IMG/VR virus record: IMGVR_UViG_3300023174_000033
Location: 186,001 to 250,000 of that record
Length of the DNA: 64,000 nt
Reading direction: 5' to 3' (one strand)
A program made the translations under genes and the position numbers. The notes beneath the pieces are model-generated. The model saw only the letters and a program-made list of their open reading frames with translations, ran no database searches and was not told where the DNA came from. Positions 3,430-55,689 of this stretch are shown here, piece by piece; position 1 is the stretch's first letter; each line of letters starts with the position of its first letter.

Positions 3430-3792
3430 ATGCGTTTCCAAAAGTTCTATGAATTCATTGCAGAAAAGAATGAAAATGAGTCAAATTACTCTGATGTAAT
3501 ACAAGAGTTGGACTCAATGATTGAGAAGTCTCTTAAAACTTCTGATGAAAAAACCAGAGAAGATTTTATTTCTGCTTATTTAAGAGATTCTGAAAAAAAT
3601 CAGATTGAAGGTTTGATAAATGATTCCGATGTTTATGAATTTTATTTGAAATATCGTAATGAAATAGATCAGAGATTATCAGAACTGAAGTTTTACGAAG
3701 AGAAACCATCTGATATGGATTCTTTCAGTCTTTATGATTATTTAGTAAAGGGTACAAAGAGAGCTATTAAGGATTTTTTAGAATCAAAATAG
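3430..3792 (+). CDS. Hypothetical protein with capsid-targeting-like leader (probable internal head protein)
   Basis: N-terminus MRFQKFYEFIAE closely matches the T4 IPII/IPIII capsid targeting sequence MKTYQEFIAE. Confidence 0.6.
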   Translation: MRFQKFYEFIAEKNENESNYSDVIQELDSMIEKSLKTSDEKTREDFISAYLRDSEKNQIEGLINDSDVYEFYLKYRNEIDQRLSELKFYEEKPSDMDSFSLYDYLVKGTKRAIKDFLESK

Positions 3793-4236
3793 TGAAATAG
3801 AAATCTTTTTTATTTCTTCAAATAAATCCATGTGTAGATGGAAGTGATTTATCACTAGCAATCCAATTGAAACTGTCATCAAAATTAATTTTAGAAAGTT
3901 AAAAGATTTTAAAAAAAGTTTATTATTTGATAGATTTAATAAAAAGTTGAAAATTAACATTATAGCAATTGTGAGTAGTGAAAATTTCCAATTGCTAGTT
4001 ATTATTCCAAAAAAAACCCAAAAGAAGTCAGCTAGAATTACTGAATTATAATTCATTAAATCTTTATATTGTTCGCTTTGCATATCAGACTTTTCAGGTT
4101 GTTTTTTTGTAACTTTTGAAAAAGCTCGTGACCATGATTGCACTTTCAAAATACTATTGATTTTTGTAAGCAATCCTATATTTGCAAGAAATAATAGCAA
4201 ACCAGAAAAATAAAACAAATGGCTGAGGAACATCAT
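3784..4236 (-). CDS. Hypothetical membrane protein
   Basis: 150-aa ORF with about four hydrophobic segments. Confidence 0.55.
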   Translation of the reverse strand: MMFLSHLFYFSGLLLFLANIGLLTKINSILKVQSWSRAFSKVTKKQPEKSDMQSEQYKDLMNYNSVILADFFWVFFGIITSNWKFSLLTIAIMLIFNFLLNLSNNKLFLKSFNFLKLILMTVSIGLLVINHFHLHMDLFEEIKKISISLF

Positions 4237-4320
4237 AGACCTTTTATGTATTCATGAATATAAAGTTTTATAAGAAATCTTTGATTTTTAATATATAAAA
4301 AAACTTCCAAAAAATTACCT

Positions 4321-12128: not shown

Positions 12129-12149
12129 AATAAAAATACGGAATATTTA

Positions 12150-14423: not shown

Positions 14424-14496
14424 TATTATTTTTACCCATTTTTAGAAAAAAACATATTGTTAAAAGTAATATATAAAACAAAAAAATAATATAATC

Positions 14497-14730: not shown

Positions 14731-14781
14731 TATTAAACTTCTATACCACTTTTCAATATCATAAAGAAAAGAATAATTTAA

Positions 14782-16924: not shown

Positions 16925-16942
16925 AATTAATATATAAATCAT

Positions 16943-24384: not shown

Positions 24385-25326
24385 ATGATTATTAGTTACA
24401 GAGATTTCATAAAAGAATCATACGGTGGTTTTAAAACTATTGGTGAGTATATCGAAAATTTATCCAAAGATAATGATTATGCTTTGAATATAATTTCTCA
24501 ATATACACAGGACTTCGATCCAAAGGTTCGACTCGCTAATGTGGTTAATACCCTACCAAAGTCAACTCAAGATTTGATTTTGAAATTGATTATAGATGAG
24601 AAATCTGGAAAAGAGGAACCAAAAGATGCTGATGTTATCGCTTATACCAGTGTGAATCTAAATGAGTCCACGACAGTAGTTGGTGGCAAACAAGTATTGC
24701 AATGTTTCCTTAAAGTAATTACAGCTCTTGGTCAAAAGAGTATTTCTTACAATCCAGAGAACACACCAAAAGATTTTATATTTTATTTCGAGACTTCTTT
24801 ACTTCAAGTTGACGATGTGAAGTCGGTGATGAGTAGATATCAATTTTTTGATAAAGTAGTTAATGAAATTGATTATACTTTTAACTTCTGTAATTTATAT
24901 TACGGAATTAAAACTGATGGTAAATTTGAATACGGTATAAAGACGGAAACAGAGATGTTGATAATAGGTCAATTTGATTTGACAGTTGGTGTCTTGAAAT
25001 ATTTACTTTTATTGAATTCGCCTTCAGCTAATGGTTTGAAAAAACAAATAGCGACTCTAAATATGAATCAACTTAAATTACTTGGTAAAATTAAAAACTC
25101 AATGGGAGATTTCAATCCTGGAACTTTCCAAAAGAAAATGAAACCTGTAATTACTGATAATATTATATCATATTCATATCATGATGAAAATATAGATATT
25201 AATGAAATTGAAAACATAAAAAGCAATTTCAAATCCTTTCTTATCCCAAACAGATGGTCGGATAAGGTACAGGTAAGTGTGTCTATAAATGGTAATTATC
25301 TTTTTCTAAATATAAAGATTAAGTAA
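24385..25326 (+). CDS. Hypothetical protein with capsid-targeting-like leader
   Basis: N-terminus MIISYRDFIKE/S and an internal LNES site. Confidence 0.55.
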   Translation: MIISYRDFIKESYGGFKTIGEYIENLSKDNDYALNIISQYTQDFDPKVRLANVVNTLPKSTQDLILKLIIDEKSGKEEPKDADVIAYTSVNLNESTTVVGGKQVLQCFLKVITALGQKSISYNPENTPKDFIFYFETSLLQVDDVKSVMSRYQFFDKVVNEIDYTFNFCNLYYGIKTDGKFEYGIKTETEMLIIGQFDLTVGVLKYLLLLNSPSANGLKKQIATLNMNQLKLLGKIKNSMGDFNPGTFQKKMKPVITDNIISYSYHDENIDINEIENIKSNFKSFLIPNRWSDKVQVSVSINGNYLFLNIKIK

Positions 25327-25328: not shown

Positions 25329-27215
25329 TTAATATTTGAAATTCTTGAAAGATTTGAATCTGATAGATTCACCAACTGGCGTACTTCCTAAATTAACACG
25401 ACTCCAATCCATTATTGACTTCACCATCTCTGATTTGTGCTTTTCATCAATGATGTCTGAATTGGTAATATAAGTAATTATATCTCTGGTGAATACCTCA
25501 GGATCCTCCATAGATTTATCCTTCAATCTTTTTAATTGATCAAATATAAATAATACGGAATCAATTTTACCAGCGGCAGCCGCCCATTTTAAAGCCATCC
25601 ATCTTCTTTCAGTTACGATTGTTAATTGTTTTTGTTCAATTGACAATTTATCACCTGGCATGTTATCTGCATATTTAAGTAATAATTTCATTGATTCTAC
25701 ATCTCCCGCTTTCGAAGCTGCTCTGAAAGGATACCCCCTGTCAAAATTCGGGTCTAGACCAGCTTTCAAAAGATATTCAACAGCTTCTGTGTTAGTCGCT
25801 AGATTTCTAAAGACACTTGAATTTAGTGTGGCGCCATGAGAAACCAATAGTTTTACCATTTCCAAATCTTTAGCATATGACACTGCGGTGTCCGCACTAC
25901 TACCATCTGTAATGTTTGGCATTGCCCCCCTCTTTAAAAGGATACTCACAAGTTCTTTGTTATCAGACTTTACTGCATTTTTCAATGGTAATCCACCTCT
26001 TGAATTCGGATCAGCTCCATTTTCCAAGGCCTCTTGGGCTTCTTCAATAGTAATGTTTGTTTCAACAATTTTTCTTGATGCTAGAATCCTTTTTCTTTTT
26101 ATCTCTTGCTCCTCTTTTGACATAGGTCCAAAGACATCCATCGGTAAACCCCAGTCTTTTATTATAGTTTTAAATGAACTTTGAACACTAGCATCCAACT
26201 TGTCATGTGCTGCACTTATATCACCATTTGGTTTTATGGTCATTCCAATTACAGATCTGGAATTAGTTGGATCTAAATTGAAGTTATATACGTAGTATTG
26301 TTTATTGTATTCCTGTAAATAATTATCCCAATAACCCTGGCTTCTAGCAATACAATGAGAGGTGTGACCATTTAATTCTCTATTTGCGATATAAGTAAAT
26401 ACTTCTATCACTAAATATCCATCTTTATCATATACAATTTTTGCACCATTTTGAGGGCCAAATTTGGTATTTACTTCATCAATTTTCTGCATGAATTTAC
26501 TAAATTGGCCGTTGTTTAAAGATTTCAAATAATTTAAGGCATAATCAATAAGTTCATCCAACTTCTTAAAGTCTTTAAGTTTTGAATAGAAAACTCTTTG
26601 AAGAGATTTTTGTGACTTCTCATCAACTTTGCCACTTTCATCTCTCCCCATCTCACCAAAAGCTATACCGATTTCTCTAATCTTTTCCTTTTGTTGATTA
26701 ATTGCCTCATCAATCCATTTCTTTTGATTTGGTAATAATTCGTTATAGAATTTCTTATAAGATTTTTCAAGTAATAATTTATCAATATCATCTGAAATTC
26801 TTTCAGAAATCGGCCTTTGATCGTCATCAGTTGGTTTAATCGCTGCGTATCTATCCAATGCCATAGGTAAATCCTTGACCATAGTTCCTAGTGATTTTAC
26901 TCTGTCGAATAAACTTTGCAATTCAAGAAACTTTTCTTGATCTGAATAATCTTGATTTGGATCTAATTCTTCAAAAAATATTTTGGTAAAAAGAAAGGTA
27001 TATCCTGGCGCATCTTTACACAAATCTTTTATTTTTAAAAACTTTGGATTTGTTTCAGCTGCTCTTACCTCATCGGCGGATAAACTCACAGGTTGATCTG
27101 TCTCACCAGCTTCTGCTTTTTTCTTTTTAAATGCGAGATTTTTTAAATATACTTTAGCTTGTTGGACATTCTCATTTAAGCTATCTTTGAAATCAAAATA
27201 TTTTTTCTGTAACAT
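25329..27215 (-). CDS. Ankyrin-repeat protein with capsid-targeting-like motifs at both termini
   Basis: Ankyrin repeats (GADPN...PLKNAV...ELVSILLKRGA; EMVKLLVSHGA; YLLKAGLDPN...PFRAA). N-terminus KKYFDFKDSLNE, C-terminus GESIRFKSFKNF. Confidence 0.75.
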   Translation of the reverse strand: MLQKKYFDFKDSLNENVQQAKVYLKNLAFKKKKAEAGETDQPVSLSADEVRAAETNPKFLKIKDLCKDAPGYTFLFTKIFFEELDPNQDYSDQEKFLELQSLFDRVKSLGTMVKDLPMALDRYAAIKPTDDDQRPISERISDDIDKLLLEKSYKKFYNELLPNQKKWIDEAINQQKEKIREIGIAFGEMGRDESGKVDEKSQKSLQRVFYSKLKDFKKLDELIDYALNYLKSLNNGQFSKFMQKIDEVNTKFGPQNGAKIVYDKDGYLVIEVFTYIANRELNGHTSHCIARSQGYWDNYLQEYNKQYYVYNFNLDPTNSRSVIGMTIKPNGDISAAHDKLDASVQSSFKTIIKDWGLPMDVFGPMSKEEQEIKRKRILASRKIVETNITIEEAQEALENGADPNSRGGLPLKNAVKSDNKELVSILLKRGAMPNITDGSSADTAVSYAKDLEMVKLLVSHGATLNSSVFRNLATNTEAVEYLLKAGLDPNFDRGYPFRAASKAGDVESMKLLLKYADNMPGDKLSIEQKQLTIVTERRWMALKWAAAAGKIDSVLFIFDQLKRLKDKSMEDPEVFTRDIITYITNSDIIDEKHKSEMVKSIMDWSRVNLGSTPVGESIRFKSFKNFKY

Positions 27216-27224: not shown

Positions 27225-28604
27225 TTATTTTAAATATTGGGATAACATTCTTACTTTCTCAAAATCACCAGCATCAATAGCATCATCTATTAACTCTTGG
27301 ATTTCACTCTGTGACATATCTTCAATTGACTTTTCTTTTTGTTGAAGTTGTTGGATTTCAGATGGTTTTTCAGTAGTTCCACCACTTTTTTGTGATTCTT
27401 CCCACTCTTTCATCTTTCTCTCATAATCTTTCATCTCCTCTTCGTATCTCCTCATCTGACCTTCGTAATCTAAATCATTAATCAAGTCATCAATCATAGA
27501 ATCAACTTTAGCTCTAGCTTCTGGTGTTTTTGTTAAAATACCTTTAACCAACTCTAAGAAATCTTTAGTTTCCATTGTTTCTCTGTCTAAAAGAGTTCTG
27601 AAGAATTCTTCTCTGAGATTTGGGATTTCATCAATCCTTTCATTTTCATTTAGAAATGCAGTTAAATCTTTTGCAATTCTTGGACCATATTTCCAATCTT
27701 CAGGCTCATCTGATAAACCAGTATTTATTAATACAGTTTGAGCAACTGATTCTTCTTCTGGAAGACCAGGTGCTGATAATAACTCATAAATACCTTTAAC
27801 GGTCTCATGTAATAACATAGGAAAATCAACACCAACAGCTTTGATAACAGGAGTTGTTTTTAACTCATCCATTTCCATATCAAACATATCATCTTCTGAT
27901 TCATCACCGGTATATTCTTTATATTCTTCCTCTGATTCCTCTTCCTCTTTTGGTTTCCAAGCTACATAAGAAGCTCCAGCAAATCCTTCTGGATTCACTT
28001 CCATCATCGCTGCTCTTTGTTGTGGGTCTGCTAACCAATCTAATTTGTCAGCACTATCCGTCATCCTTTTCCAAATAGTTAAAATCTGTTCCGATTGGTC
28101 GCCAAAAATATCTCTAACACCATCTTGAACGATTGAAGATTCCAATAAATCTTTTATCCCTTTAGCTTTTCCTTGGATGAGTAAGTTAGCAATCTTTCTT
28201 TTGTGAATTTCATCCTTAACATCCTCATCAGTTATTTCTCTGAATGATTCCATATCTGGTTCTGATTCTTCAGCTTCATCCATGAAATTTTTAACTTCTC
28301 TTGGTTTAACAAGTTTAAGGTCAAGTTCTATTTCATATCTTTTTAGTAAGTCTTGGTAGATTGATGTTATCAAATCAGTGGCTAGTTTGGAAAGTTCTTC
28401 CTCTTTACCCTGTGTTAATCTCTGAGACTCTCCTAAATCACGCATGAGTTGCATACCAACTTGCATTTCTTGTCCTCTATCTCCTTGTCTAACACCCATT
28501 CTTTGTTGCTCTTCTCTTTCAATACCTGATTTGTATCCACCAGGCACGGCTGGATTGTCTTCAATCGATGCTTCCTTTAAAAATGTTGTATATTTCTTTA
28601 ACAT
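27225..28604 (-). CDS. Acidic hypothetical protein with capsid-targeting-like leader
   Basis: MLKKYTTFLKE/A, central FPMLLHETVKGIYE motif, C-terminal IDDAIDAGDFEKV. Confidence 0.6.
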   Translation of the reverse strand: MLKKYTTFLKEASIEDNPAVPGGYKSGIEREEQQRMGVRQGDRGQEMQVGMQLMRDLGESQRLTQGKEEELSKLATDLITSIYQDLLKRYEIELDLKLVKPREVKNFMDEAEESEPDMESFREITDEDVKDEIHKRKIANLLIQGKAKGIKDLLESSIVQDGVRDIFGDQSEQILTIWKRMTDSADKLDWLADPQQRAAMMEVNPEGFAGASYVAWKPKEEEESEEEYKEYTGDESEDDMFDMEMDELKTTPVIKAVGVDFPMLLHETVKGIYELLSAPGLPEEESVAQTVLINTGLSDEPEDWKYGPRIAKDLTAFLNENERIDEIPNLREEFFRTLLDRETMETKDFLELVKGILTKTPEARAKVDSMIDDLINDLDYEGQMRRYEEEMKDYERKMKEWEESQKSGGTTEKPSEIQQLQQKEKSIEDMSQSEIQELIDDAIDAGDFEKVRMLSQYLK

Positions 28605-36558: not shown

Positions 36559-36562
36559 TTTG

Positions 36563-37231: not shown

Positions 37232-38164
37232 TTATAGTGGTAAGTTATATCCACCAAATTTTTCTATGTATTCCGTGATTGGAGTTCCGTACCCATCTTT
37301 GGTCACAATTCCATGGTCTAGGAATTTTTTCACGTTAGATGGTCCTAACAAGTGAGCGCCAGCTAGTAGACCAGATTTAGTTATCTTAACACCTTTCTTG
37401 GTTTTCCCAACCCACTTATCAATATAATCTCCTAAATAAGCTTTATTATTTTTGAGGAGTTGTTTCATAGCCAAGTCTTGCTTATGTTCTGGCCAAAAGT
37501 CGGTCCCTTTATTACTGAATTTAGATTTGAAAAAATTATAGTCAGCCTCAGTTTTCACCAGTCCAAAGTTTTTCGGCCAAAATGTTTTGATTCGTGACTT
37601 ATATTGATCTTCGGTTTCTCCTGGTTGTTTTTTCAAAATGTCTCTCAAAGCAACTTCACCGAATTGATATTTACCCATATATCCCAAACTATTTATAGTA
37701 TCAGCTCTTCCGGTTGATTCCTTATCAGCCATAGCTTTTAGGAATTTTTTCGCACTACCACTAATCGGTGCATTGTATTTCACAACATCCTCCGATTCAC
37801 CTTCTTCTTCTTCAATCCAAGAATCTGGTAAAGATTCATCCATTGATCTTTGATATAATTCTTCAGCGGAAACTACTGTGTCTTGTGGAATCATCCCAAT
37901 CAATTCTTGCTTGGTGAAATGATGCTTAGCTGCTAAAAGACCTATCACAAAAATAAGAACTTTAGGATTTGCTTTGAAATATCTAAATATTTTAACAGCG
38001 ACGGTTGTGAGAAACCTATCTCCTTTTTTAGCAGCTTCTTCTATGTAGTGGAATATCTTCTCACTAAGTTCCTCCCAATCAAAACCTTCGTTCAATCTTT
38101 CAAAATGATTTTGCCAGTTTTTCAATTCTTCTTGGATTAAAAAGTCAGTGTAATTATTAATCAT
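37232..38164 (-). CDS. Lysozyme-like/lytic transglycosylase-fold protein with capsid-targeting-like leader
   Basis: Catalytic-like KESTG, GYMGKYQFG, AGAHLLG, DGYGT..T.Y. Start moved to MINNYTDFLIQE (38164) because the longer ORF runs through the terminator and promoter. Confidence 0.7.
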   Translation of the reverse strand: MINNYTDFLIQEELKNWQNHFERLNEGFDWEELSEKIFHYIEEAAKKGDRFLTTVAVKIFRYFKANPKVLIFVIGLLAAKHHFTKQELIGMIPQDTVVSAEELYQRSMDESLPDSWIEEEEGESEDVVKYNAPISGSAKKFLKAMADKESTGRADTINSLGYMGKYQFGEVALRDILKKQPGETEDQYKSRIKTFWPKNFGLVKTEADYNFFKSKFSNKGTDFWPEHKQDLAMKQLLKNNKAYLGDYIDKWVGKTKKGVKITKSGLLAGAHLLGPSNVKKFLDHGIVTKDGYGTPITEYIEKFGGYNLPL

Positions 38165-43254: not shown

Positions 43255-44004
43255 TTACTGTTCCTTGATCAATTTATTGCCGTCAGAGTCAATATGTCCT
43301 AAATCCTCAACATCAGACAGTATTGTATCCTTTGGAGATTTATTTTTGGTGTGATTTTTTATAAAGTCTAAAATAGTTTTACCTGATATAGTAGCAACGC
43401 CAGTAGCTAATGATATGAGATTTCCAGATAAGTTTTCTGGTGTTATGTGATAAGTTCCAACCAAAGAGGAAATTGCATTCATTACTGGTTGTAGGATTGC
43501 AGTGTAGGCAAACATATCAATAATATTATTTAAAGCAACCCCAAATAATTTTTGGAATTTTTTAATGAATAGAAATATTGATTGGAAACATTTTATCAAT
43601 TTATCAATTAATATTCTCGGATTTCCAAATTTCATTTGGATTTCCGCGTTCAACTTATGTTTAATATCCTCTGCCGGTATAGGTGGATTTCTGTTATTTT
43701 CCAAATAGATTATTGATAACATAGTTATGCAGAGTAAAACTATATCTTCTTGTGATGGTCTTATTTCCAATTCCATGTTTTCAATTAATTTGAAAACGAT
43801 CGGATACATTAATTTTACCCCAGTTCCAAAGGTTAACACTAAACTCATGTTGAATCCGAACTTATTAAGAATTGACTTTATTACATCAGAAAGATGATTT
43901 TCTTCACCAGATTCATGTAAAATTTCTGAATCTATCTCATTGAGAAAATTGTAAGCTATTTCTTGCCAATTTTGATAATCAGAAAATTTTAAAATATTAT
44001 TCAT
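43255..44004 (-). CDS. Hypothetical protein with hydrophobic helices and capsid-targeting-like leader
   Basis: Start moved to MNNILKFSDY (44004). Contains LNE/LHES sites and several hydrophobic segments. Confidence 0.5.
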   Translation of the reverse strand: MNNILKFSDYQNWQEIAYNFLNEIDSEILHESGEENHLSDVIKSILNKFGFNMSLVLTFGTGVKLMYPIVFKLIENMELEIRPSQEDIVLLCITMLSIIYLENNRNPPIPAEDIKHKLNAEIQMKFGNPRILIDKLIKCFQSIFLFIKKFQKLFGVALNNIIDMFAYTAILQPVMNAISSLVGTYHITPENLSGNLISLATGVATISGKTILDFIKNHTKNKSPKDTILSDVEDLGHIDSDGNKLIKEQ

Positions 44005-44073: not shown

Positions 44074-44586
44074 ATGAAACATCTTAAAACTTTTGAATTC
44101 TTCTCCTTTGGTCAACCAGATATGGGTAGAGAAGAAGACGACGATAACGTTTACCTCTCACATGAGTCTGAAGAGGAAATTACTGTACCACCTTTTGGAG
44201 AAGAAGAGGGAGAAGGATGTGAATCCTGTGGTTGTGAAGAATGTGAATGTGGTTCACCAAATTCTGGACAAATGGGATATCCAAATAAATGGTCTGGTGA
44301 AGAAGAGGAGGAGGAAGAAATGATGCCATCTGAAATGGAGATTATGAAATTCGAGGCAAAGAAAACCTCTAAAAAAGCTAAACCAGATTTCTTAGATTTA
44401 GATAAAGATGGTGATAAAAAAGAAACTATGAAGAAAGCTGCTGCTGATAAGAAGAAATCAGAGAAGGGTAAAGATTCAAAAGATGCTAAAAAAGATGAAA
44501 AGGCCCCAAAAGGTAAACTTTCAAAAGCACAGGAAAAACTACCACCGGCTCTAAAAAAGGCAATAGCTCAAGGAGTAAGAGATTAA
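44074..44586 (+). CDS. Low-complexity acidic/basic protein, probable head-internal protein
   Basis: MKHLKTFEFF leader, CESCGCEECEC cluster, KPDFLDLDKDGDKKETMKKAA motif, Lys-rich tail. Promoter at 44042..44049. Confidence 0.6.
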   Translation: MKHLKTFEFFSFGQPDMGREEDDDNVYLSHESEEEITVPPFGEEEGEGCESCGCEECECGSPNSGQMGYPNKWSGEEEEEEEMMPSEMEIMKFEAKKTSKKAKPDFLDLDKDGDKKETMKKAAADKKKSEKGKDSKDAKKDEKAPKGKLSKAQEKLPPALKKAIAQGVRD

Positions 44587-46324: not shown

Positions 46325-46984
46325 ATGAAATATCTCAAGCTTTTTGAAAATTTTGGCACCAATGACACCCTTTATATCTTTGATTTTGATGATACATTGG
46401 TGGATACACCTAGTTTTGAAGAGTTGGCTATACAATATTTGACTGAAAGTCAGAACATTGGAGATTTGATAAAAAGATCTTTACAATTTGTTAATAAAGA
46501 ACAGAAAGACTTGAAGATTGAAAATGGTAGGATATACATTGAAGATCCAAATCAAACTATTGATCCAAAGGGTAATTGGGTTAGAAAGGGGTTGAGAGTT
46601 TATATGGTCACTCCAAACGTTTATCACTTTTTAGATATTTCACTACCGACAAAAGTAAAAGAACTTTCTGAACTATATAAACAAGTCCAAAATAAGTCAA
46701 TTGTAACAGGCAGAATGGTTGACTTGAAAGAAAAAGTAATAGAATCATTGGAAAAATTTGGATTAGAATTACCTAATCATGGTTTGTTTTGTTATCCATC
46801 AAAAGATGATAGAACAGATAGAGTTGCTGAATGGAAAGCTAAAACTATAGTTCAACTTCTAAAAGATACTGGGTTTAAAAAAGCTAAGTTCTATGATGAT
46901 AAACCAAAATGGGTTAAGAAAGTAGTAACAGCAGTAAGAACAGAATTACCAGAGGTTGAATTTGAAGGTATAAGAGTTCATTAA
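46325..46984 (+). CDS. HAD-superfamily phosphatase (RNA-repair-like HAD) with capsid-targeting-like leader
   Basis: FDFDDTL motif I, VTGR motif II, K motif III, FYDD motif IV. N-terminus MKYLKLFENF. Confidence 0.75.
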   Translation: MKYLKLFENFGTNDTLYIFDFDDTLVDTPSFEELAIQYLTESQNIGDLIKRSLQFVNKEQKDLKIENGRIYIEDPNQTIDPKGNWVRKGLRVYMVTPNVYHFLDISLPTKVKELSELYKQVQNKSIVTGRMVDLKEKVIESLEKFGLELPNHGLFCYPSKDDRTDRVAEWKAKTIVQLLKDTGFKKAKFYDDKPKWVKKVVTAVRTELPEVEFEGIRVH

Positions 46985-49119: not shown

Positions 49120-49866
49120 ATGTTTATTAAAATTTTTGAAGAATTCACACAGGCTCAATTTGAACCAATAAAATCTTTCAGGTTACAAGATGATTTGAAC
49201 TCTGAATTTTGGGATGATTTTAATTTAGACTCTGAAATAAAATCCGAGTTGCTGAATTTAGCAAATGATTATTTTGAGAATTTAGATTTGGGTAATGTAG
49301 AATTAAAAGATGTGATTTTCACTGGATCCTTGGCTAATTACAATTGGAGCAAATACTCTGATATTGATTTGCACCTAGTTTTTGATTTTTCTGACGTGAA
49401 TGAGGATGTTGATTTGGTTAGAAAATACTTGGATGCTATTGAGAAGAGTTGGAAACTGCAACATGATATTCAAATAAAGGGATATGATGTAGAAATCTAT
49501 TGTCAAGATTCTAATCAGGAACATCATTCAACTGGCATTTATTCACTAATAAATGATGAGTGGATTAAGAAGCCAACCAAAGAAGATTTTGAACCTGATG
49601 AAGATTCAATAAAAAAGAAAGCTTCAATCTATATGGGTTCAATAAATGACCTTGAAAAAGACGTAGAATCTGGTAAATCTTATAATATTCTCAAATCCAA
49701 GATTAAAAAGATATGGAAAAAAATAAAAGATGCCAGACAAGCTGGACTTGAAAGAGAGGGTGAATTTTCTGTAGAAAACCTCGTTTTTAAATTGATGAGA
49801 AGGAATGGATACATAGAGAAATTTATGAATCTAAAAGCTAAATCTTATGATAAACAATACAAATAA
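49120..49866 (+). CDS. Pol-beta-superfamily nucleotidyltransferase with capsid-targeting-like leader
   Basis: FTGS.ANYNW...SDIDLH signature (GS...DxD) and third acidic residue in VEIY. N-terminus MFIKIFEEF. Confidence 0.8.
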   Translation: MFIKIFEEFTQAQFEPIKSFRLQDDLNSEFWDDFNLDSEIKSELLNLANDYFENLDLGNVELKDVIFTGSLANYNWSKYSDIDLHLVFDFSDVNEDVDLVRKYLDAIEKSWKLQHDIQIKGYDVEIYCQDSNQEHHSTGIYSLINDEWIKKPTKEDFEPDEDSIKKKASIYMGSINDLEKDVESGKSYNILKSKIKKIWKKIKDARQAGLEREGEFSVENLVFKLMRRNGYIEKFMNLKAKSYDKQYK

Positions 49867-50594: not shown

Positions 50595-51359
50595 ATGAGA
50601 AACGATAGTAGTCAAAATTATAAAACACCTTATAGTAATATTTCTAATTTTAGAGAGTTCACAGATAATGTCCGTAAAGAAAAGGATGAATTGAAAAAAT
50701 TAGATAGAAAATTGAAGAAGCAAGATAGGGAAATTACAAACCCGCATCCGGATGGTATGAATTTTAATACTATAACTCATAAAATGGATAAAAATATCAC
50801 AAAGAAAGATTTAGAAGATAGAATCAAAGCTTTGGAAGATGATGGTGTTGAAGATACTGACCACAAATATAAAATTTCAGAGTCCAAAAGAAGGGTGAGA
50901 ACCTTTGAACATATGGATATGGAACACCATCACGAAGAAACACCATCCCATATGGATCACTCTGGTGAGACTACTTCATATATGTTCTTCACAAATATAA
51001 AAACAATACATCGTTTAGTTAGCGAAATGTTACAATTTGACAAACAATCAGTTAATACCCTATTGAACGATGGTCACAATTGGGCCGAAGATCATTTATC
51101 CGTAGCAAAAGAAAGTGTTAGTCACGTTTTCAATTTCCTTACAAACAAAACAATTAAGGAAAACCACCAAGGATTTAATTATATGTTCTTTGAAAATATT
51201 GAATCAATTCATAAAATGTGTGAGAAAATTTTACAAATGGGTGAATCTGAAATTGATATGATTCTACAAGATGGTCACGATTGGGCAGAGGATCATATAT
51301 CCGCCGCTAAAGAAAATGTGGAACAAGTCCACGATTTCCTAGAAAATGAAATGATGTAA
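50595..51359 (+). CDS. Hypothetical protein with a duplicated ~65-aa domain
   Basis: Two copies of YMFF.NI..IH.......DGH(N/D)WAEDH(L/I)S.AKE.V..V..FL.N. Confidence 0.6.
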   Translation: MRNDSSQNYKTPYSNISNFREFTDNVRKEKDELKKLDRKLKKQDREITNPHPDGMNFNTITHKMDKNITKKDLEDRIKALEDDGVEDTDHKYKISESKRRVRTFEHMDMEHHHEETPSHMDHSGETTSYMFFTNIKTIHRLVSEMLQFDKQSVNTLLNDGHNWAEDHLSVAKESVSHVFNFLTNKTIKENHQGFNYMFFENIESIHKMCEKILQMGESEIDMILQDGHDWAEDHISAAKENVEQVHDFLENEMM

Positions 51360-52867
51360 TGAAACTTAGAAGATACATTGATTTTTTATTACCTATTAAC
51401 GAATCTGAATTAGTTTATTCAGATAGATTCAGAAAACTATTAAGTAAAATAGATTCACCAGTCGCTCAAGGTCTAATAGATTTGGAGAAAAAAGACCATG
51501 AATTTCCTAATAACTATATTGATATCGGAGATAATAAGAATCAAATTACTTTTATCACAGACAGAAAGGCAAAAGAATTGATTTCAAGTACAGAATCTAA
51601 AAAAGTCACACATATGGGTTCTGGTCATTTAACACACTCAGAATCCAATAATAATATTTTTGATGCTCTGGGATATACACCAGAAGGTCCACAAACATAT
51701 CATCCGCAACCAAATGAGGAAGGTGTTATAGAATCAGAATATACATCCCCAACATCAGGTAATGTATACTGTAAAGTTGTGTTCCCTGGTGGTATTTCTA
51801 TTATCAATAAAAGTAGATTGAGAACTGTTGATTTGTCAAAATTACCATTTACTAAAAATAGACAACCAGGTAGGGTTGGAGCTTCAATTCAAACTTTATT
51901 AAGAACTGCGAATGTTAGTTTTTCAAATGCTGAAATTGAACAGTTTGTGAATAAATATAAATCTGAATTTGATAAATTCAATGATGCTTTCAGAAACTTT
52001 GAATTAGTTTCTGGAAATGCAATTCACCATTGGTATCAATATGAAAATTATCTACATGGTAGATCAAAAGGACAATTAAGTAACTCATGTATGTGTTCAG
52101 CATCGGAAAGATGGTTACAAATCTATACACAAAATCCTGATGTCTGTCAATTACTTATCTTAAAAGATGATGACCAACAAGATAAAATAAAAGGGAGAGC
52201 TCTTGTTTGGAAATTATCATTACCTAAAGACATCACTTATGTTGATAGAATTTACACACATGATGATTCTGATTTGGAACTTTTCAAACAATATATTGCA
52301 CAACAAGGATGGTATTTGAAAAAGAGATATACAAGTTCTACTAATGATACCACGATGATCGCGCCAGATGGTTCGGAATCAAGACCAGCAATGTTGGAAG
52401 TCAGATTAAAGGATAAAGAATATGGTAGTTATCCATATTTGGATACTTTAAAATTCTATTCACCTACAAATGGTATATTATCTTCAGAGGGTGGTGAATA
52501 CCAATTAGAAGACACTGGTGGTGGATATTCTAACCAAGAATGTGACTACTGTGGTGGAGATGGTTATGTAGAGTGTGGTGATTGTTATGGTAGAGGTAGA
52601 TTGAGATGTGATGAGTGTAGCAATGGAAAGATTGAATGTCCAGAATGTGAGGGTGCTGGTGAACTTGAATGTAGTACCTGTGATGGTAAAGGTGTAGATG
52701 ATGAAGGAAACCCCTGTGAAGATTGCAATGGCGATGGTACAAAAAAGTGTGAAGACTGTTTCGGTAATGGTGAAAGAGATTGCCCAGATTGCGATGGTGA
52801 AGGTTATGTAGAATGTCCCAACTGTGATGGTAACGGACAGAATTCTTGCCACGAATGTAATTACTAA
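51359..52867 (+). CDS. Protein with SCM/GRALVW/DRIY/YPYLDT core (PcfJ-like) and C-terminal DnaJ-type CxxCxGxG zinc-finger repeats
   Basis: Motifs read from the translation: about nine CxxCxGxG units plus a terminal CHEC. Leader MKLRRYIDFLLPINE/S. Confidence 0.65.
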   Translation: MKLRRYIDFLLPINESELVYSDRFRKLLSKIDSPVAQGLIDLEKKDHEFPNNYIDIGDNKNQITFITDRKAKELISSTESKKVTHMGSGHLTHSESNNNIFDALGYTPEGPQTYHPQPNEEGVIESEYTSPTSGNVYCKVVFPGGISIINKSRLRTVDLSKLPFTKNRQPGRVGASIQTLLRTANVSFSNAEIEQFVNKYKSEFDKFNDAFRNFELVSGNAIHHWYQYENYLHGRSKGQLSNSCMCSASERWLQIYTQNPDVCQLLILKDDDQQDKIKGRALVWKLSLPKDITYVDRIYTHDDSDLELFKQYIAQQGWYLKKRYTSSTNDTTMIAPDGSESRPAMLEVRLKDKEYGSYPYLDTLKFYSPTNGILSSEGGEYQLEDTGGGYSNQECDYCGGDGYVECGDCYGRGRLRCDECSNGKIECPECEGAGELECSTCDGKGVDDEGNPCEDCNGDGTKKCEDCFGNGERDCPDCDGEGYVECPNCDGNGQNSCHECNY

Positions 52868-52870
52868 ACT

Positions 52871-53053
52871 ATGGAAAATATACTCTCATACGAAGATTTC
52901 ATTACAGAAGGATATAACAAACCAAGAAAGGGTATGAAATCTAGATGGTCTGTTAAATACAAGAAGAAGATAAATTGTAGTAGTCCCAATCTTGGATTTT
53001 CACAAAAGCAATATTGTAAAAGAAAGAGAAAGGGTGGAAAATATAAGTCATAA
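52871..53053 (+). CDS. Small basic protein with capsid-targeting-like leader
   Basis: MENILSYEDFITE/G then WS.KYKK.INC..P..GFSQKQYC. Confidence 0.6.
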   Translation: MENILSYEDFITEGYNKPRKGMKSRWSVKYKKKINCSSPNLGFSQKQYCKRKRKGGKYKS

Positions 53054-53081: not shown

Positions 53082-53086
53082 ATTTG

Positions 53087-53474: not shown

Positions 53475-53915
53475 TTAAAAAGGAAGGTCATCATCAAAAT
53501 CAAAACTTTTTTTACCACTACTTTCTTTGTAGTAAAAATCGAATGTAATCAATGGTTTTTTGTCCTTGGTATACCAAAGGTCCACTGCTGGCTCGTATGA
53601 TACGAGTATATCTTTATGGATTTTTTTCATCAATCCAATTAAGGAAGAAAATGTGGAAAATTTTCTATCTTGTTCTAAAATAAACTCCATAACAAAATCT
53701 TTATCATGGACAGTCACAGTGTAATTCTTTACACCAGAGTTCCTAATCATCTGTCTTATGGTGGAAGCTAAATGTTCAAATGCAACCTTCACCTCATCAT
53801 TATCATCTTCTGTCTCTTGACTTTTGGGAGATAATTCCGAATTGAAGTCAAAGTCAAACTCATCATCTGATTCATCATATTTTTCAAAAGTTCTTATGTG
53901 TTTATTCCAATTCAT
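53475..53915 (-). CDS. Hypothetical protein with capsid-targeting-like leader and SSB-like C-terminal tail
   Basis: N-terminus KHIRTFEKY, C-terminus FDFDDDLPF. Confidence 0.55.
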   Translation of the reverse strand: MNWNKHIRTFEKYDESDDEFDFDFNSELSPKSQETEDDNDEVKVAFEHLASTIRQMIRNSGVKNYTVTVHDKDFVMEFILEQDRKFSTFSSLIGLMKKIHKDILVSYEPAVDLWYTKDKKPLITFDFYYKESSGKKSFDFDDDLPF

Positions 53916-55288
53916 TAGTCGAAGCGAATTTTTATTGTATTTTCACTAAATGAAATACTAGGTTGATATCTATGTTCAGCGAATAACTTTTCTAACATTT
54001 TCACATCGTCATGGAAATCATTTAATTCACCATTTATAATTTCCATACTCATAACAAGTTTACCTTCTTCACTTGTATATTTTATTTGATTATAGGTGCG
54101 CAATCTTCTTGCTTCACCCACCATTCTAGAATACTTTTTGGAAACTTCCTCATCAATTCCAATTTTTCTTTTAACCGATAAACTGTTCCAATTGCAAGAC
54201 ACTGAAGCTTTGCAAAGTTTCTCAAGATAGGTTATATTTTGAGATTCCGAGTTTCTATGTTCATCAAAATACCCAACAGATATATTTGTACATTCTGGTA
54301 CCAAGTCAATAAAGTTTGCTGAATCGGTAAATACTCCAGTTGGGTCTAAATTCAATTTCATCCCATAATTGTTCATCTCATCACAGAGAGATTTAGCAAA
54401 CTCATTTGAGCAACACTGAACCCCCATCTGTTGGGTAATTACTGAAAAATAATTTCTTCTATCAAACGAGACTACTTTCTTTATATCTTTCATGAAAGAG
54501 TAATTTCCATAATTATTAGCAACCGCTCTAGAACCAATACCACCTCTTTCTTCTCCTATGAAGAACCAATAAACACCCGGTACATTGTTGTGGATCATGT
54601 ACATCAATACCGTGACACCAGCTTTGTCATCAGCTCCTAGAATTGATTTACCATCTGTTGCTATAAATGTCTGACCATCTTTCTCAAACTCAATAAGGTT
54701 TATTTCATTCTTTGATCTTGATGCAGTATCAAGGTGGCAAGTGAAAGCTGTATCGGACTTACCTATAACGTGGTAATAGTTACCATGTCCGTCTTTTTTC
54801 AAAAAGTTGGGTAAATACTTAACCACCTCTTCTTCATATCCGTGTGGATAAGTTTCAGTGACTAATGATAAAAATGTGCCTTTTATATCACTTGGGTCAT
54901 ATTGAAACTCTGGTATATCTACAAATTCATATTCATCCCCCTCGTCCTCACCACCGGTATCCAATAATTTATTATATGCGGTAACAAATTTCTGAATTTG
55001 TTCATCTGAAAATTGAGTTCCAAAATAGTTTTTTAAAAATGCGGTTATCCTAACATCTATGTTGTGACCTGATATAGTTACTGTAAACCTACCTTCTTTA
55101 TCCGATAGGTCAACTTTTTCTACACGCATTACGTTCCGGATAGTAGGATTTGAATCCAAGTCGTAAAGGGACCAAGCCACTTCAGAGTTCTGTGTTTGTG
55201 CTAGTTTATCTAACATAATCCAGAAATCATCGGAAAATTTAATTAGTGGATCGGGTTTATAATTTTTCCCCTTTTTATCTTTAGCCAT
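53915..55288 (-). CDS. M28/M20-clan zinc peptidase/amidohydrolase
   Basis: CHLDT, LGADDKAG, GEERGGIGS, SFDRR, FTDS, NISVGY..EH metal-binding motifs. Confidence 0.85.
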   Translation of the reverse strand: MAKDKKGKNYKPDPLIKFSDDFWIMLDKLAQTQNSEVAWSLYDLDSNPTIRNVMRVEKVDLSDKEGRFTVTISGHNIDVRITAFLKNYFGTQFSDEQIQKFVTAYNKLLDTGGEDEGDEYEFVDIPEFQYDPSDIKGTFLSLVTETYPHGYEEEVVKYLPNFLKKDGHGNYYHVIGKSDTAFTCHLDTASRSKNEINLIEFEKDGQTFIATDGKSILGADDKAGVTVLMYMIHNNVPGVYWFFIGEERGGIGSRAVANNYGNYSFMKDIKKVVSFDRRNYFSVITQQMGVQCCSNEFAKSLCDEMNNYGMKLNLDPTGVFTDSANFIDLVPECTNISVGYFDEHRNSESQNITYLEKLCKASVSCNWNSLSVKRKIGIDEEVSKKYSRMVGEARRLRTYNQIKYTSEEGKLVMSMEIINGELNDFHDDVKMLEKLFAEHRYQPSISFSENTIKIRFD

Positions 55289-55299
55289 GGACTTATATA

Positions 55300-55689
55300 T
55301 TAACTTTTGGAAACAAATATCTCGTAAGAGTTATTGTAATCTACCTTTACTTGACCAGGATTTAATTCTGGTGTCTTTTTTACATATTTCTTTTTACAAT
55401 AAACAACACAAATTTGGTCTTCCTTTGATTTTGAATTTTTTGCGGCTATTTGTGCGACCTTTTTTATAGTAAGCTCCATTGGGACTTTATCCTTAATTTT
55501 AATTAAAACATGGCTACCTGGTACACCTTTAGCATGGAACCATAAATCCTCATCTTGCCCCATTTCAAAAGTCAGATAATCGTTGGAATTTGCGTCCTTT
55601 CCCTGTAATATTAAAAACCCATCAATTTCATGTTTTTTAATCTTTGGTCGTTCTTCACTTGACTCAAAAAAAGATTTTAAATGTTTCAT
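55300..55689 (-). CDS. Stand-alone NFACT-R (RqcH/FbpA C-terminal, DUF814-type) RNA-binding domain protein with capsid-targeting-like leader
   Basis: DGF.I..GK.A..ND.LT......DLWFHA.GVPGSHV.I...A..AA..SK.....V.Y...K.V.K.....PG.V. N-terminus MKHLKSFFES. Confidence 0.85.
   Translation of the reverse strand: MKHLKSFFESSEERPKIKKHEIDGFLILQGKDANSNDYLTFEMGQDEDLWFHAKGVPGSHVLIKIKDKVPMELTIKKVAQIAAKNSKSKEDQICVVYCKKKYVKKTPELNPGQVKVDYNNSYEIFVSKS

What the first reader, a model, noticed from the sequence alone, without database searches (positions are those of the whole stretch)
3430..55689. About 18 unrelated proteins share a T4-type capsid-targeting leader: a candidate large injected proteome
Seen: N-termini fit M-(K/R)-hydrophobic-(K/R/S)-x-(F/Y)-x-(E/D/x)-F-(I/L)-x-E in 3430 (QKFYEFIAE), 24385 (ISYRDFIKE), 27215 (KKYFDFKDSLNE), 28604 (KKYTTFLKE), 28849 (LKTYHKFLKE), 28923 (KHLRVFE), 30189 (ILEFTEF), 38164 (NNYTDFLIQE), 44004 (ILKFSDY), 44074 (KHLKTFEFF), 46325 (KYLKLFENF), 49120 (IKIFEEF), 50595 (ISNFREF; internal RVRTFEH), 51359 (RRYIDFLLPINE), 52871 (ILSYEDFITE), 53915 (KHIRTFEKY), 55689 (KHLKSFFES) and weakly 30148. 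Replication enzymes and fibres lack it. Known: T4 IPII/IPIII use MKTYQEFIAE to enter the prohead, and gp21 cleaves after (I/L)-x-E. Inference: this phage has attached the tag to many enzymes (HAD phosphatase, nucleotidyltransferase, NFACT-R, muramidase, Dps-like, ankyrin and zinc-finger proteins) so they are packaged, matured and delivered with the DNA. That is far more cargo than T4's few internal proteins.
Basis: partly seen in the sequence, partly recalled or inferred. Interest (0 to 1): 0.82.

Follow-up and report, generated by a model that had tools for sequence, protein, structure and literature searches.

The report
Capsid-targeting-like leader on many megaphage proteins
A freshwater megaphage puts a short N-terminal tag, resembling the one phage T4 uses to load proteins into its head, on about a quarter of the genes in this window and on 13-22% of a relative's genes, so it may inject a very large set of ready-made proteins, though packaging is not shown.

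Summary
Sixteen of 56 genes in the window start with a 9-15 residue leader: basic start, aromatic pair, then hydrophobic-x-Glu. Thirteen are strong and three are supported by orthologues. Internal matches are near zero. Selection acts on the peptide, not the RNA.

The window belongs to a 465-kb lake megaphage with a T4-type head: a gp23-like capsid protein and a gp21-type protease with the catalytic His and Ser.

In the 635-kb relative LR745206.1, 120-204 of 938 genes carry the leader, in 123 unrelated families. T4 has only IPII/IPIII by the same pattern, and Tenacibaculum phage pT24 has none.

Evidence for capsid targeting:
- 88% of leaders end in a gp21-like site.
- The leader lies outside the fold.
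- Orthologues keep it.
- Tagged genes share the head operon's promoter-like motif.
- Their mature parts are depleted in [IL]xE.
- The protease carries about ten tandem YSEY[IL]AE repeats, close to T4's YQEFIAE.

Packaging, cleavage and injection remain untested. Verdict: partly supported; a new variant of a known kind.

The parts
3430..3792 (+). 120-aa protein with leader MRFQKFYEFIAE|K. FYEFIAE is the closest match in the window to T4 YQEFIAE.
   Evidence: The orthologue in LR745206.1 starts MIKKYLQFIKE. AATATATA lies 12 nt upstream.
24385..25326 (+). 313-aa protein, leader MIISYRDFIKE|S
   Evidence: Orthologue MIIKKYIKFIKE. No Pfam or PHROG hit.
25329..27215 (-). 628-aa ankyrin-repeat protein, leader MLQKKYFDFKDSLNE|N
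   Evidence: Orthologue MKLHKYNHFLGIKPLNE.
27225..28604 (-). 459-aa protein, leader MLKKYTTFLKE|A
   Evidence: Orthologue MKNFKDFMNE.
28607..28849 (-). 80-aa basic protein, leader MKRLKTYHKFLKE|N. It fits both leader styles at once.
   Evidence: (9.7 bits). First gene of a three-gene tagged operon, with AATATATA 25 nt upstream.
28923..29417 (+). 164-aa DUF5856 protein. The leader is displaced: MKKFSTFKFKHLRVFE|Q.
   Evidence: Orthologue MKKFSDFGGKKPVKRINE.
30189..30869 (+). 226-aa protein, probable leader MKKKTKLILEFTEF
   Evidence: 10.1 bits at residue 6. The N-terminus is conserved in LR745206.1 as MKRKNKLILEFTEF.
37232..38164 (-). 310-aa lysozyme-like protein, leader MINNYTDFLIQE|E
   Evidence: phrog_27932 (tail lysozyme part), 6e-7, over residues 123-301.
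43255..44004 (-). 249-aa protein, probable leader MNNILKFSDYQNWQE
   Evidence: The orthologue holds MKIQRYQEYENYDE. Weakest of the accepted items.
44074..44586 (+). 170-aa acidic protein, leader MKHLKTFE|FF
   Evidence: 17.0 bits.
46325..46984 (+). 219-aa HAD-like protein, leader MKYLKLFE|NF. It sits directly before the DFDDT motif.
   Evidence: 16.6 bits. HAD_2 hit is weak. Orthologue MNINRFEKY + DFDDT.
49120..49866 (+). 248-aa nucleotidyltransferase-like protein, leader MFIKIFE|EF
   Evidence: Twelve orthologues start MK.xK[YF][FY]EF. Pfam NTP_transf_2 hit is weak.
51359..52867 (+). 502-aa protein with a DnaJ-type zinc finger, leader MKLRRYIDFLLPINE|S
   Evidence: Orthologue MIKKYLDFIKES.
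52871..53053 (+). 60-aa basic protein, leader MENILSYEDFITE|G
   Evidence: Orthologues are 95-97% identical.
53475..53915 (-). 146-aa very acidic protein in the head module, leader MNWNKHIRTFE|KY
   Evidence: 14.1 bits. Thirty-three orthologues carry MKLKKYNNYLKE- or MIQKYKRFIER-type leaders.
55300..55689 (-). 129-aa NFACT-R domain protein next to the capsid gene, leader MKHLKSFFE|SS
   Evidence: NFACT-R_1 1e-15. About 90 distinct homologue N-termini all carry the leader. AF2 pLDDT is 49 for residues 1-10 and above 90 for the fold.
61865..63937 (-). 690-aa prohead protease (T4 gp21 type) fused to a scaffold-like helical tail
   Evidence: phrog_207 1e-29. Peptidase_S77 hit is weak. BLAST to T4 gp21 gives 3e-4, and DHP and VSSR align with H85 and S140. 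A long helix spans residues 235-435 in a low-confidence AF2 model.
62661..63077 (-). About ten tandem 14-residue (42-nt) repeats, YSEY[IL]AENLDKNIA, inside the protease gene. Each holds a CTS-like heptad and an [IL]-A-E site.
   Evidence: All 78 orthologues have 8-13 copies. LR756501 has 13 and LR756504 has 11; the array is degenerate in LR756500 and absent in pT24.
59997..61787 (-). 596-aa gp23-like major capsid protein. Its N-terminal region is conserved, with PVLE|N and SINE|N sites.
   Evidence: Pfam Gp23 6e-27.
50595..51359 (+). ISNFREF starts at residue 16.
29843..30148 (-). MRIRKISED has no aromatic pair, so at most it is a decayed leader.
   Evidence: The orthologue starts MKIKRLYEN.

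Best explanation
The leader is a cleavable capsid-targeting propeptide of the T4 type, greatly expanded in this megaphage lineage.

Proposed mechanism:
1. Tagged proteins are made together with the head proteins.
2. Their short amphipathic N-terminal peptide (basic start, two aromatic or hydrophobic residues three or four apart, then hydrophobic-x-Glu) docks onto the assembly core of the prohead.
3. That core is built by the helical repeat tail of the protease-scaffold protein, whose 14-residue unit carries the same kind of heptad (YSEY[IL]AE).
4. After the shell closes, the gp21-type serine protease cuts after the Glu in each scaffold repeat and in each leader.
5. The scaffold leaves as small peptides. 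The mature cargo stays in the head and enters the host with the DNA.

Shown here:
- the tag, its position and its portability;
- its conservation and its absence from housekeeping and structural genes;
- the protease family and its catalytic residues;
- the scaffold repeats;
- the link to a promoter-like motif;
- the depletion of [IL]xE in the mature parts.

Inferred, not shown: docking, cleavage, retention in the head and injection.
For: 1. Likeness to the tested T4 signal.
- IPII and IPIII begin MKTYQEFIAE and IPI begins MKTFKEF in the T4 record. The CTS sequence and role are given in bioRxiv 10.1101/2021.01.19.427310, PMC5694885 and PMC3012670.
- Window gene 3430 has FYEFIAE.
- The pattern [YF]xxF[IL]x(1,2)E picks only IPII and IPIII among 157 ORFs in 100 kb of T4.

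2. T4-type head. The capsid protein is gp23-like. The protease matches phrog_207 at 1e-29 and has His/Ser equivalents of gp21 H85/S140 (residues from PMC12991175).

3. Cleavage site. gp21 cuts after Glu in I/LxE and weakly at xxE (PMC12991175). In LR745206.1, 115 of 131 leaders have hydrophobic-x-Glu at residues 7-18, against 29-31% in controls. The Glu peaks at residues 9 and 11 and is followed by S/N/E/A.

4. The tag is peptide-level and portable.
- Synonymous codon use equals the genome's.
- The 131 tagged proteins fall into 123 clusters.
- In the NFACT-R family the leader stays at the extreme N-terminus even when another domain is inserted, and cellular RqcH-like homologues lack it.
- It lies outside the fold (pLDDT 49 against above 90).

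5. Conservation of state. All 12 tagged window genes that have an orthologue keep a leader at 31-54% identity: 7 by the automatic test and the other 5 by eye. Of 24 untagged genes, 23 stay untagged.

6. Co-regulation hint.
- Of the LR745206.1 genes preceded by AATATATA, 35% are tagged. Of those preceded by TAnnTTTG, 4% are (Fisher p = 7e-11).
- AATATATA precedes the protease that heads the head-gene cluster there.
- In the window it precedes the capsid gene and three large unannotated genes next to the fibre-like block (4321, 7097, 18915).

7. Mature parts of tagged proteins are specifically poor in [IL]xE. Observed over expected is 1.01 against 1.17, permutation p = 0.0014. [IL]xD, [IL]xK, [IL]xQ and Ex[IL] are unaffected.

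8. Scaffold repeats YSEY[IL]AE occur 8-13 times in all 78 orthologous proteases.

9. Control phages. pT24, which has a similar AT-rich genome, has no repeats and no leader in 170 genes.

10. Annotated cargo looks like entry or counter-defence tools: an Acb1-like 2H phosphoesterase fused to an exonuclease, an Rnl1-type RNA ligase, a SMODS-associated NUDIX, GH108, an M15 peptidase and a lysozyme.
Against: - There is no virion proteome, no cultured relative and no direct sign of cleavage.
- At least 120-200 different cargo species would exceed any known phage head. SPN3US has about 50 head proteins (PMC7411985).
- Tagged proteins are acidic (median pI 5.0, only 10% above pI 8). T4 internal proteins are described as highly basic.
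- The majority style (MKYLKxFNES) matches the T4 CTS only in spacing. Several window leaders end in T-F-E.
- A strict matrix built from the scaffold repeats finds few leaders: 3-5-fold enrichment only, and only gene 3430 in the window. The leader-repeat likeness is therefore at the level of a loose pattern, and that pattern was relaxed after the repeats were seen.
- AATATATA also precedes non-head genes, so its timing is not established.
- LR756504 has full repeats but few leaders in the 50 kb sampled.
- The [IL]xE depletion is modest (14%). Its replication in the IMG/VR loci is confounded by the protease repeats in the untagged set.
Confidence: 0.55

Rival explanations
1. The leader is a propeptide removed by a phage peptidase but is not a packaging signal. 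Candidates are the head protease or the M20-like peptidase at 53915-55288. It could keep enzymes inactive, or mark them for timed activation or destruction late in infection, in the cytoplasm.
For: - The hydrophobic-x-Glu end and the depletion of [IL]xE in mature parts show only an encounter with such a protease, not residence in the head.
- A second peptidase (phrog_4191, 1e-67; weak PepT/M20 similarity) sits between two leader genes in the head module.
- Many tagged proteins are enzymes that could harm the phage's own processes if active early.
Against: - In T4, gp21 is part of the prohead core (PMC5694885), and its activity is restrained by autoproteolysis (PMC12991175).
- This reading does not explain the conserved basic-aromatic part upstream of the cut site.
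- It does not explain its likeness to the scaffold repeat and the T4 CTS.
Confidence: 0.15
2. The leader is a docking peptide for some other destination or partner in the infected cell: a membrane, a phage-built compartment, a chaperone or a secretion route.
For: - It is a short, conserved, structurally free amphipathic N-terminal peptide on about 120-200 unrelated proteins. That is the hallmark of any sorting signal.
- The number of clients fits a compartment better than a capsid.
- The clients are acidic.
Against: - By reading the leaders listed, none has the long hydrophobic core of Sec or lipoprotein signals. No signal-peptide predictor was run.
- No compartment genes were looked for or seen here.
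- This reading does not explain the Glu-ended site, the [IL]xE depletion, or the repeat in the head protease.
Confidence: 0.15
3. The leader is an N-terminal element that boosts translation start or early elongation, or protein stability, in a host without Shine-Dalgarno use.
For: - Upstream regions lack Shine-Dalgarno-like sequences and are A/T-rich.
- Lys at residues 2 and 5 and Tyr or Ile at residues 3-4 are A/T-rich codons.
- From my own recollection, not checked here: codons 3-5 are known to affect protein yield.
Against: - Synonymous codon use in the leader equals that of gene bodies.
- Conservation extends to residues 9-13 and includes a Glu and a small residue.
- The genes expected to be most highly expressed (capsid and the large fibre-like proteins) lack it.
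- pT24, with comparable composition, has none in 170 genes.
Confidence: 0.08
4. The pattern is chance, a compositional artefact, or a DNA-level cassette boundary for gene shuffling.
For: - K, F, Y, I, L, N and E are common in a 32% G+C genome.
- From my own recollection, not checked here: T4's internal-protein loci were proposed to swap genes through conserved CTS-coding DNA.
Against: - At 10 bits, 120 genes are observed and 0.6 expected.
- Shuffled and internal controls fail.
- Synonymous sites vary freely.
- Leader sequences differ between orthologues while the motif persists.
Confidence: 0.02

Closest known systems
[quoted passage not shown]
   Same: - A 10-20 residue N-terminal peptide on otherwise unrelated proteins.
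- The same core: Lys, aromatic-x-x-Phe, then [IL]-x-Glu (T4 MKTYQEFIAE against FYEFIAE, YRDFIKE, YTTFLKE here).
- The phage has a gp23-type shell and a gp21-type protease.
   Different: - T4 has three such proteins, which are described as highly basic. Here the count is 16 of 56 genes in the window and 120-204 of 938 in a relative, and they are mostly acidic.
- The majority style (MKYLKxFNES, MKHLKxYKIFES) differs from T4's sequence.
- The scaffold-like tail of the protease repeats a CTS-like heptad.
- Function is untested here.
Long N-terminal propeptides of ejection proteins in phiKZ-like giant phages (SPN3US, 201phi2-1, phiKZ)
   Same: A homologous prohead protease removes N-terminal propeptides after Glu from many internal head proteins that are thought to be ejected. 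There are about 50 head proteins and more than 40 MDa of internal protein.
   Different: Those propeptides are mostly longer than 100 residues, with sites such as A-x-E, and have no shared short leader (PMC5694885; S/A/G-x-E for phiKZ is from my own recollection). Here the leader is 9-15 residues and shares a motif across more than 100 families.
Encapsulin cargo-loading peptides
   Same: A short conserved peptide outside the cargo's fold directs unrelated enzymes into an HK97-fold shell.
   Different: From my own knowledge, not checked here: they are usually C-terminal, bind the shell protein itself, are not cleaved, and there is no DNA or injection.
T4 gp22 scaffold and gp21 protease as separate proteins
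   Same: A protease of the same family, plus a helical, Glu-rich core protein cut at [IL]xE into small peptides.
   Different: Here one 690-aa chain carries both parts. The helical part is a regular array of 14-residue repeats, each with one [IL]-A-E site.

Membership tests
T4-type capsid targeting sequence (CTS) propeptide | Located at the extreme N-terminus, 10-20 residues, outside the folded domain | tested here: met
   The motif starts at residues 2-6. It stays N-terminal in two-domain variants. pLDDT is 49 for residues 1-10 and above 90 for the domain. In the HAD-like protein the leader precedes the DFDDT motif directly.
T4-type capsid targeting sequence (CTS) propeptide | Sequence likeness to MKT[YF]xEF(IAE) | tested here: inconclusive
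   Eight window leaders fit [YF]xxF[ILK]..E, a pattern that is specific for IPII/IPIII in T4. The majority style shares only the Lys, the hydrophobic spacing and the Glu.
T4-type capsid targeting sequence (CTS) propeptide | Ends in a prohead-protease site (I/L-x-E) | tested here: met
   88% of 131 leaders have hydrophobic-x-E at residues 7-18, against 29-31% in controls. In the window 13 of 16 do. 44074 ends T-F-E, and in 53475 the Glu next to the motif is also T-F-E.
T4-type capsid targeting sequence (CTS) propeptide | The phage encodes a gp21-family protease and a gp23-family shell | tested here: met
T4-type capsid targeting sequence (CTS) propeptide | The leader is sufficient to load a foreign protein into proheads and is cleaved there | not testable with these tools
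   Needs expression or virion mass spectrometry. The single read-laying run gave nothing and would not have addressed this.
T4-type capsid targeting sequence (CTS) propeptide | Made at the time of head assembly | tested here: inconclusive
   Tagged genes are 14-fold enriched behind AATATATA, which precedes the head-gene cluster, relative to TAnnTTTG. The timing of either motif is unknown.
Peptidase S77 (T4 gp21 prohead protease), for 61865-63937 | Profile match and catalytic His and Ser | tested here: met
   phrog_207 1e-29. Pfam PF03420 scores only 19 bits, below its cut-off. BLAST to gp21 gives 3e-4. GEFDHP and VSSRA align with gp21 H85 and S140 and are invariant in 41 orthologues.
Long propeptides of phiKZ-like giant phages | Propeptide longer than about 100 residues, removed at a small-residue-x-E site | tested here: not met
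   The conserved part is 9-15 residues, and the domain starts by residue 12-20.
Sec, Tat or lipoprotein signal peptide | Hydrophobic core of 10 or more residues after a basic start | tested here: not met
   The leaders listed turn acidic or polar after residue 8-11. This is by inspection only; no predictor was run.

The most novel reading that the evidence does not exclude
These freshwater megaphages load a proteome-scale cargo into the head. More than 100 unrelated proteins, 13-22% of all genes, each carry a short leader that imitates one unit of the scaffold's own 14-residue repeat. One protease then dissolves the scaffold and frees the cargo. The phage would thus enter the cell with a ready-made tool kit for entry, counter-defence and takeover. 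The leader would then be a sequence key that lists the injected proteome of uncultured huge phages directly from metagenomes.
Probability: 0.4. Interest if true: 0.9.

Novelty: new variant of a known kind. Interest (0 to 1): 0.78.

Why it matters
- Huge phages are uncultured, and most of their genes have no assigned function. A readable N-terminal tag that marks a defined class of more than 100 proteins per genome would give a first functional partition of that dark matter.
- If the tag means "packed and injected", the lists are candidate first-strike effectors. The annotated ones already include an Acb1-like cyclic-nucleotide phosphodiesterase fusion, an RNA ligase, NUDIX enzymes and wall hydrolases.
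- It would also show that the internal-protein strategy of T4 can scale by two orders of magnitude.
- It suggests a simple mechanism, cargo imitating a scaffold repeat, that can be tested in vitro and might be used to load proteins into T4-type shells.
- If the tag has another meaning, it is still an unexplained sorting signal on a fifth of a viral proteome.
- I found no description of it in the literature searched.

Tried and rejected
- A first motif search that included Met1 only found the Met. It was rerun from residue 2.
- The LR745206-derived matrix misses the T4-like style, so the two styles were scored separately. Orthologue series then showed they interchange.
- The search for homologous proteins on the NFACT-R protein returned only close relatives. 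The exhaustive representative search was needed to reach cellular homologues.
- A strict matrix from the scaffold repeats does not single out leaders: 3-5-fold enrichment only. I therefore claim likeness of pattern, not identity.
- Alignment of the capsid protein with T4 gp23 did not place a Glu at the position of T4's maturation cut. Only conserved PVLE|N and SINE|N candidates were seen.
- The PDB sequence search found nothing for the protease, and only a weak PepT match for 53915-55288.
- The [IL]xE depletion test in the IMG/VR loci is confounded by 78 protease copies in the untagged set. I do not count it.
- The Lak-A1 sample (50 kb, TAG read as sense) showed essentially no leaders. LR756504 and LR756500 showed few, and the samples are too small for firm rates.
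- Literature searches for the motif strings returned only unrelated matches.

Full report
**What the window is.** The 596-aa protein at 59997-61787(-) is a gp23-type major capsid protein (Pfam Gp23, 6e-27).
- It is 68% identical to that of the 634,780-bp uncultured phage LR745206.1.
- It is 66% identical to LR756502.1, 47-50% to the 636-735-kb genomes LR756504 and LR756501, 29% to the Prevotella Lak phages, and 25% to the cultured Tenacibaculum jumbo phage pT24.
- The window is an exact part of IMG/VR contig 3300023174_000033, 464,605 bp.
- Its DNA occurs in lake and freshwater metagenomes of several studies.
- I called 56 genes. None has a Shine-Dalgarno-like upstream sequence.

They occur once and never in the 19,197 internal positions.
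- Those patterns were written after the fact, so I took a second genome as a test set. I fetched all of LR745206.1, called 938 ORFs and ran a zero-or-one-site EM motif search on residues 2-24.
- The search found K-[YH]-[LI]-K-x-[FY]-[EN]-E-F, beginning at residue 2 in most cases. The log-likelihood gain was 913, against 223 for segments that follow internal Met and 432 for shuffled N-termini.
- At 10 bits this matrix marks 120 of 938 genes (0.6 expected from internal windows). At 6 bits it marks 204 (11 expected).
- In the window it marks 5 to 7 of 56.
- The T4-like style, [YF]xxF[IL]xE, is 12-fold enriched at N-termini in the same genome.
- Typical starts are MKYLKSFNES, MKHLKTYKIFES and MIKKYLQFIKE.

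**One tag, two styles.** Within single orthologous families the two styles replace each other.
- The NFACT-R protein next to the capsid gene begins MKHLKSFFES here. Elsewhere it begins MKYLKYFES, MIKKFNSFNES, MRLKKYKQFNES or MINKYEKFLES, always followed by the same mature start, KKDKFP or KxxKPN.
- All 12 tagged window genes that have an orthologue in LR745206.1 keep a leader at 31-54% identity. Seven pass the automatic test and five are judged by eye. Of 24 untagged genes, 23 stay untagged.
I reject 50595 and the already weak 29843-30148.

**Peptide, not RNA; tag, not domain.**
- Synonymous codon use inside 120 leaders equals that of gene bodies for K, F, E, H, N, S and R. For L, I and Y it shifts only slightly (p = 0.01-0.02), in the same direction as in untagged N-termini. 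In the window the same residues are written with different codons.
- Without their first 18 residues, the 131 tagged proteins of LR745206.1 fall into 123 BLAST clusters. The window's tagged proteins are also unrelated.
- In an exhaustive search of 1.8 billion representatives, the phage-type NFACT-R proteins carry the leader at the extreme N-terminus even when another domain lies between it and the NFACT-R domain. Examples are P0123, P0135 and P0137.
- The roughly 500-aa cellular RqcH-like homologues align only from query residue 9-22 onward and have no leader.
- An AlphaFold2 model from 70 sequences gives pLDDT above 90 for the fold but 49 for residues 1-10, although M1 and E9 are nearly invariant.

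**Specificity controls.**
- In 100 kb of T4 the T4-like pattern hits exactly IPII and IPIII (MKTYQEFIAE), and the majority-style matrix hits nothing. IPI begins MKTFKEF.
- In 150 kb of pT24, 170 genes from a comparably A/T-rich jumbo phage of a Bacteroidota host, neither style occurs. The tag is therefore not a general property of such genomes.
- In 50-kb samples, LR756501 has about 8 of 57 genes tagged. LR756504 and LR756500 have one or two, and Lak-A1 has essentially none.

**Who carries it.**
- In the window the tagged proteins are:
  - an ankyrin-repeat protein;
  - DUF5856;
  - NFACT-R;
  - a protein with a DnaJ-type zinc finger;
  - a lysozyme-like protein;
  - weak HAD and nucleotidyltransferase matches;
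  - several proteins with no match.
- The untagged genes with a clear role lack it:
  - RNR large subunit, DnaB and an XPD-like helicase;
  - the PolB exonuclease domain and a DNA methylase;
  - APS kinase, a sulfotransferase and a GT2 enzyme;
  - a homing endonuclease;
  - collagen-repeat and LamG fibre-like proteins;
  - the capsid protein and the protease.
- In LR745206.1 only about a tenth of the tagged proteins have any Pfam match. Those matches are:
  - an Acb1-like 2H phosphoesterase fused to a DEDD exonuclease;
  - an Rnl1-type RNA ligase;
  - a SMODS-associated NUDIX;
  - a DHH phosphoesterase;
  - methyltransferases;
  - GH108 and an M15 peptidase.
- Tagged proteins have a median length of 169 aa and are acidic (median pI 5.0). 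They are spread over the whole genome, often in tandem arrays.

**Link to the head machinery.**
- The 690-aa protein at 61865-63937(-) is a prohead protease: phrog_207 at 1e-29 and a weak Pfam S77 hit.
  - It aligns with T4 gp21 at E = 3e-4.
  - GEFDHP and VSSRA align with the catalytic H85 and S140 (residues from PMC12991175). Both are invariant in 41 orthologues.
- gp21 cuts after Glu in I/LxE and weakly at other xxE (PMC12991175).
  - Of 131 leaders, 115 have hydrophobic-x-Glu at residues 7-18, against 29-31% in untagged N-termini and internal windows.
  - P3 is F, I, L or Y. The Glu sits mostly at residue 9 or 11, and the next residue is mostly S, N, E or A.
- The capsid protein keeps conserved PVLE|N and SINE|N in its N-terminal region. 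SINEN aligns with T4's IFEN.
- Two tagged genes, the NFACT-R protein and a very acidic 146-aa protein, lie in a conserved block right after the capsid gene.

Residues 258-418 of the protease hold about ten tandem copies of a 14-residue unit, YSEY[IL]AENLDKNIA (42-nt repeats at 62661-63077).
- All 78 orthologous proteases have 8-13 copies. The heptads are YSEYIAE (314 times), YSEYLAE (246) and variants that include YQEYIAE.
- T4's tested signal is YQEFIAE.
- The loose pattern [YF]xx[FY][ILV]xE occurs internally at 4.4e-4 per residue elsewhere. That gives about 0.3 expected in this protein.
- LR756501 has 13 copies and LR756504 has 11. LR756500 has a decayed array, and pT24 has none and also has no leaders.
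- AlphaFold2 gives one long helix for residues 235-435, then a disordered acidic stretch. Confidence is low (mean pLDDT 55).
- The protease therefore drags a regular helical array in which every unit has a CTS-like face and one [IL]-A-E site. That is what one would expect of a self-dissolving scaffold.
- Caution: a strict matrix made from the repeats enriches N-termini only 3-5-fold and picks only gene 3430 in the window. The repeats also use Tyr where leaders use Phe. The likeness is one of pattern.

**Two further indirect tests.**
- Two upstream motifs dominate in LR745206.1.
  - TTAATATATA is 15-fold enriched and lies about 12-37 nt before the ATG.
  - TAnnTTTG has, from my own knowledge, the form of the Bacteroidota -7 promoter element.
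  - Genes behind AATATATA are tagged in 35% of cases. Genes behind TAnnTTTG are tagged in 4% (odds ratio 14, p = 7e-11).
  - AATATATA precedes the protease that heads the head-gene cluster.
  - In the window it precedes the capsid gene, three large unannotated genes next to the fibre-like block (4321, 7097, 18915) and most tagged operons. The helicase and polymerase genes lack it, and the RNR gene has only the variant TATATATA.
- If tagged proteins meet a protease that cuts at [IL]xE, their mature parts should avoid that motif.
  - They do. Observed over expected is 1.01 against 1.17 in untagged proteins (permutation p = 0.0014).
  - [IL]xD, [IL]xK, [IL]xQ, Ex[IL], [AG]xE and [ST]xE show no deficit.
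  - The effect is modest. Its apparent replication in the IMG/VR loci is confounded.

**Interpretation.** The best reading (about 0.55) is a T4-type capsid-targeting propeptide that this lineage has spread over a large share of its accessory genes. The cargo docks on a scaffold made of like units and is freed by the same protease.
- What argues for caution:
  - packaging has not been observed;
  - the number of clients is unprecedented;
  - the clients are acidic;
  - the majority style is far from T4's;
  - the timing of the promoter classes is unknown.
- Rivals that keep the protease but drop the capsid, or that keep a sorting role with another destination, each deserve about 0.15. A translation or stability role deserves less than 0.1. 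Chance is excluded.

**Comparison with the known.**
- The T4 CTS is a 10-20 residue propeptide on three internal proteins and Alt, and it can carry foreign proteins into the head (PMC5694885, PMC3012670, bioRxiv 10.1101/2021.01.19.427310).
- phiKZ-like giant phages process many ejection proteins, but through propeptides of more than 100 residues with no shared short leader (PMC5694885, PMC10052503).
- I found no report of a shared short leader on more than 100 proteins, or of a CTS-like repeat array in a head protease.
- I therefore file this as a new variant of a known kind.

Noticed in passing
window 53084-53437 (-): A tmRNA gene (Rfam RF00023, 58 bits, full length) fills the gap between 52871-53053 and 53475-53915. 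ARAGORN did not report it. It lies two genes from the leader-bearing NFACT-R protein, whose domain family also acts in ribosome rescue.
   Followed up: partly
window 36412-36483 (-) and 36562-36634 (-): tRNA-Gln (TTG) and tRNA-Glu (TTC) genes.
   Followed up: yes
window 8256-24371: A block absent from the syntenic place in LR745206.1. It holds a collagen-repeat protein (1290 aa), a LamG-domain protein, a sulfotransferase (15654-16472), an APS kinase (18240-18827), a 139-aa protein with an HKGH motif near its N-terminus (17824-18243), a DUF2061 membrane protein and an 1818-aa protein. It may be a sulfation pathway tied to fibre decoration.
   Followed up: partly
window 16943-17827 (+): A GIY-YIG / NUMOD3 homing endonuclease gene inside that block.
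   Followed up: partly
window 53915-55288 (-): A 457-aa protein matching phrog_4191 'peptidase' (1e-67), with weak similarity to peptidase T (M20). It is conserved between the two leader genes just after the capsid gene. Two orthologues (in L080 and L086) have gained an N-terminal extension ending IFE|AG.
   Followed up: partly
window, upstream of many genes (e.g. 3418-3425, 28874-28881); LR745206.1 genome-wide: Two upstream motif classes. TTAATATATA lies 12-37 nt before the ATG, is 15-fold enriched, and implies very short leaders on the mRNAs. TAnnTTTG is the Bacteroidota -7 type. They probably mark phage-specific and host-type promoters.
   Followed up: partly
window 46981-48474 (-): Only the exonuclease domain of a family B DNA polymerase is present in this 497-aa protein. 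This suggests a split polymerase; pT24 also has two ORFs annotated 'DNA polymerase'.
   Followed up: no
window 63937-61865 (-), residues 456-525: A long Glu-rich disordered stretch follows the repeat array of the protease. After it comes a conserved helical C-terminal domain holding an invariant HFLKFL segment.
   Followed up: no
window 8256-12128 (+): The collagen-repeat fibre-like protein starts [11 protein letters not shown]. This has the aromatic pair of the leader but no Glu-ended site, and its meaning is unclear.
   Followed up: no
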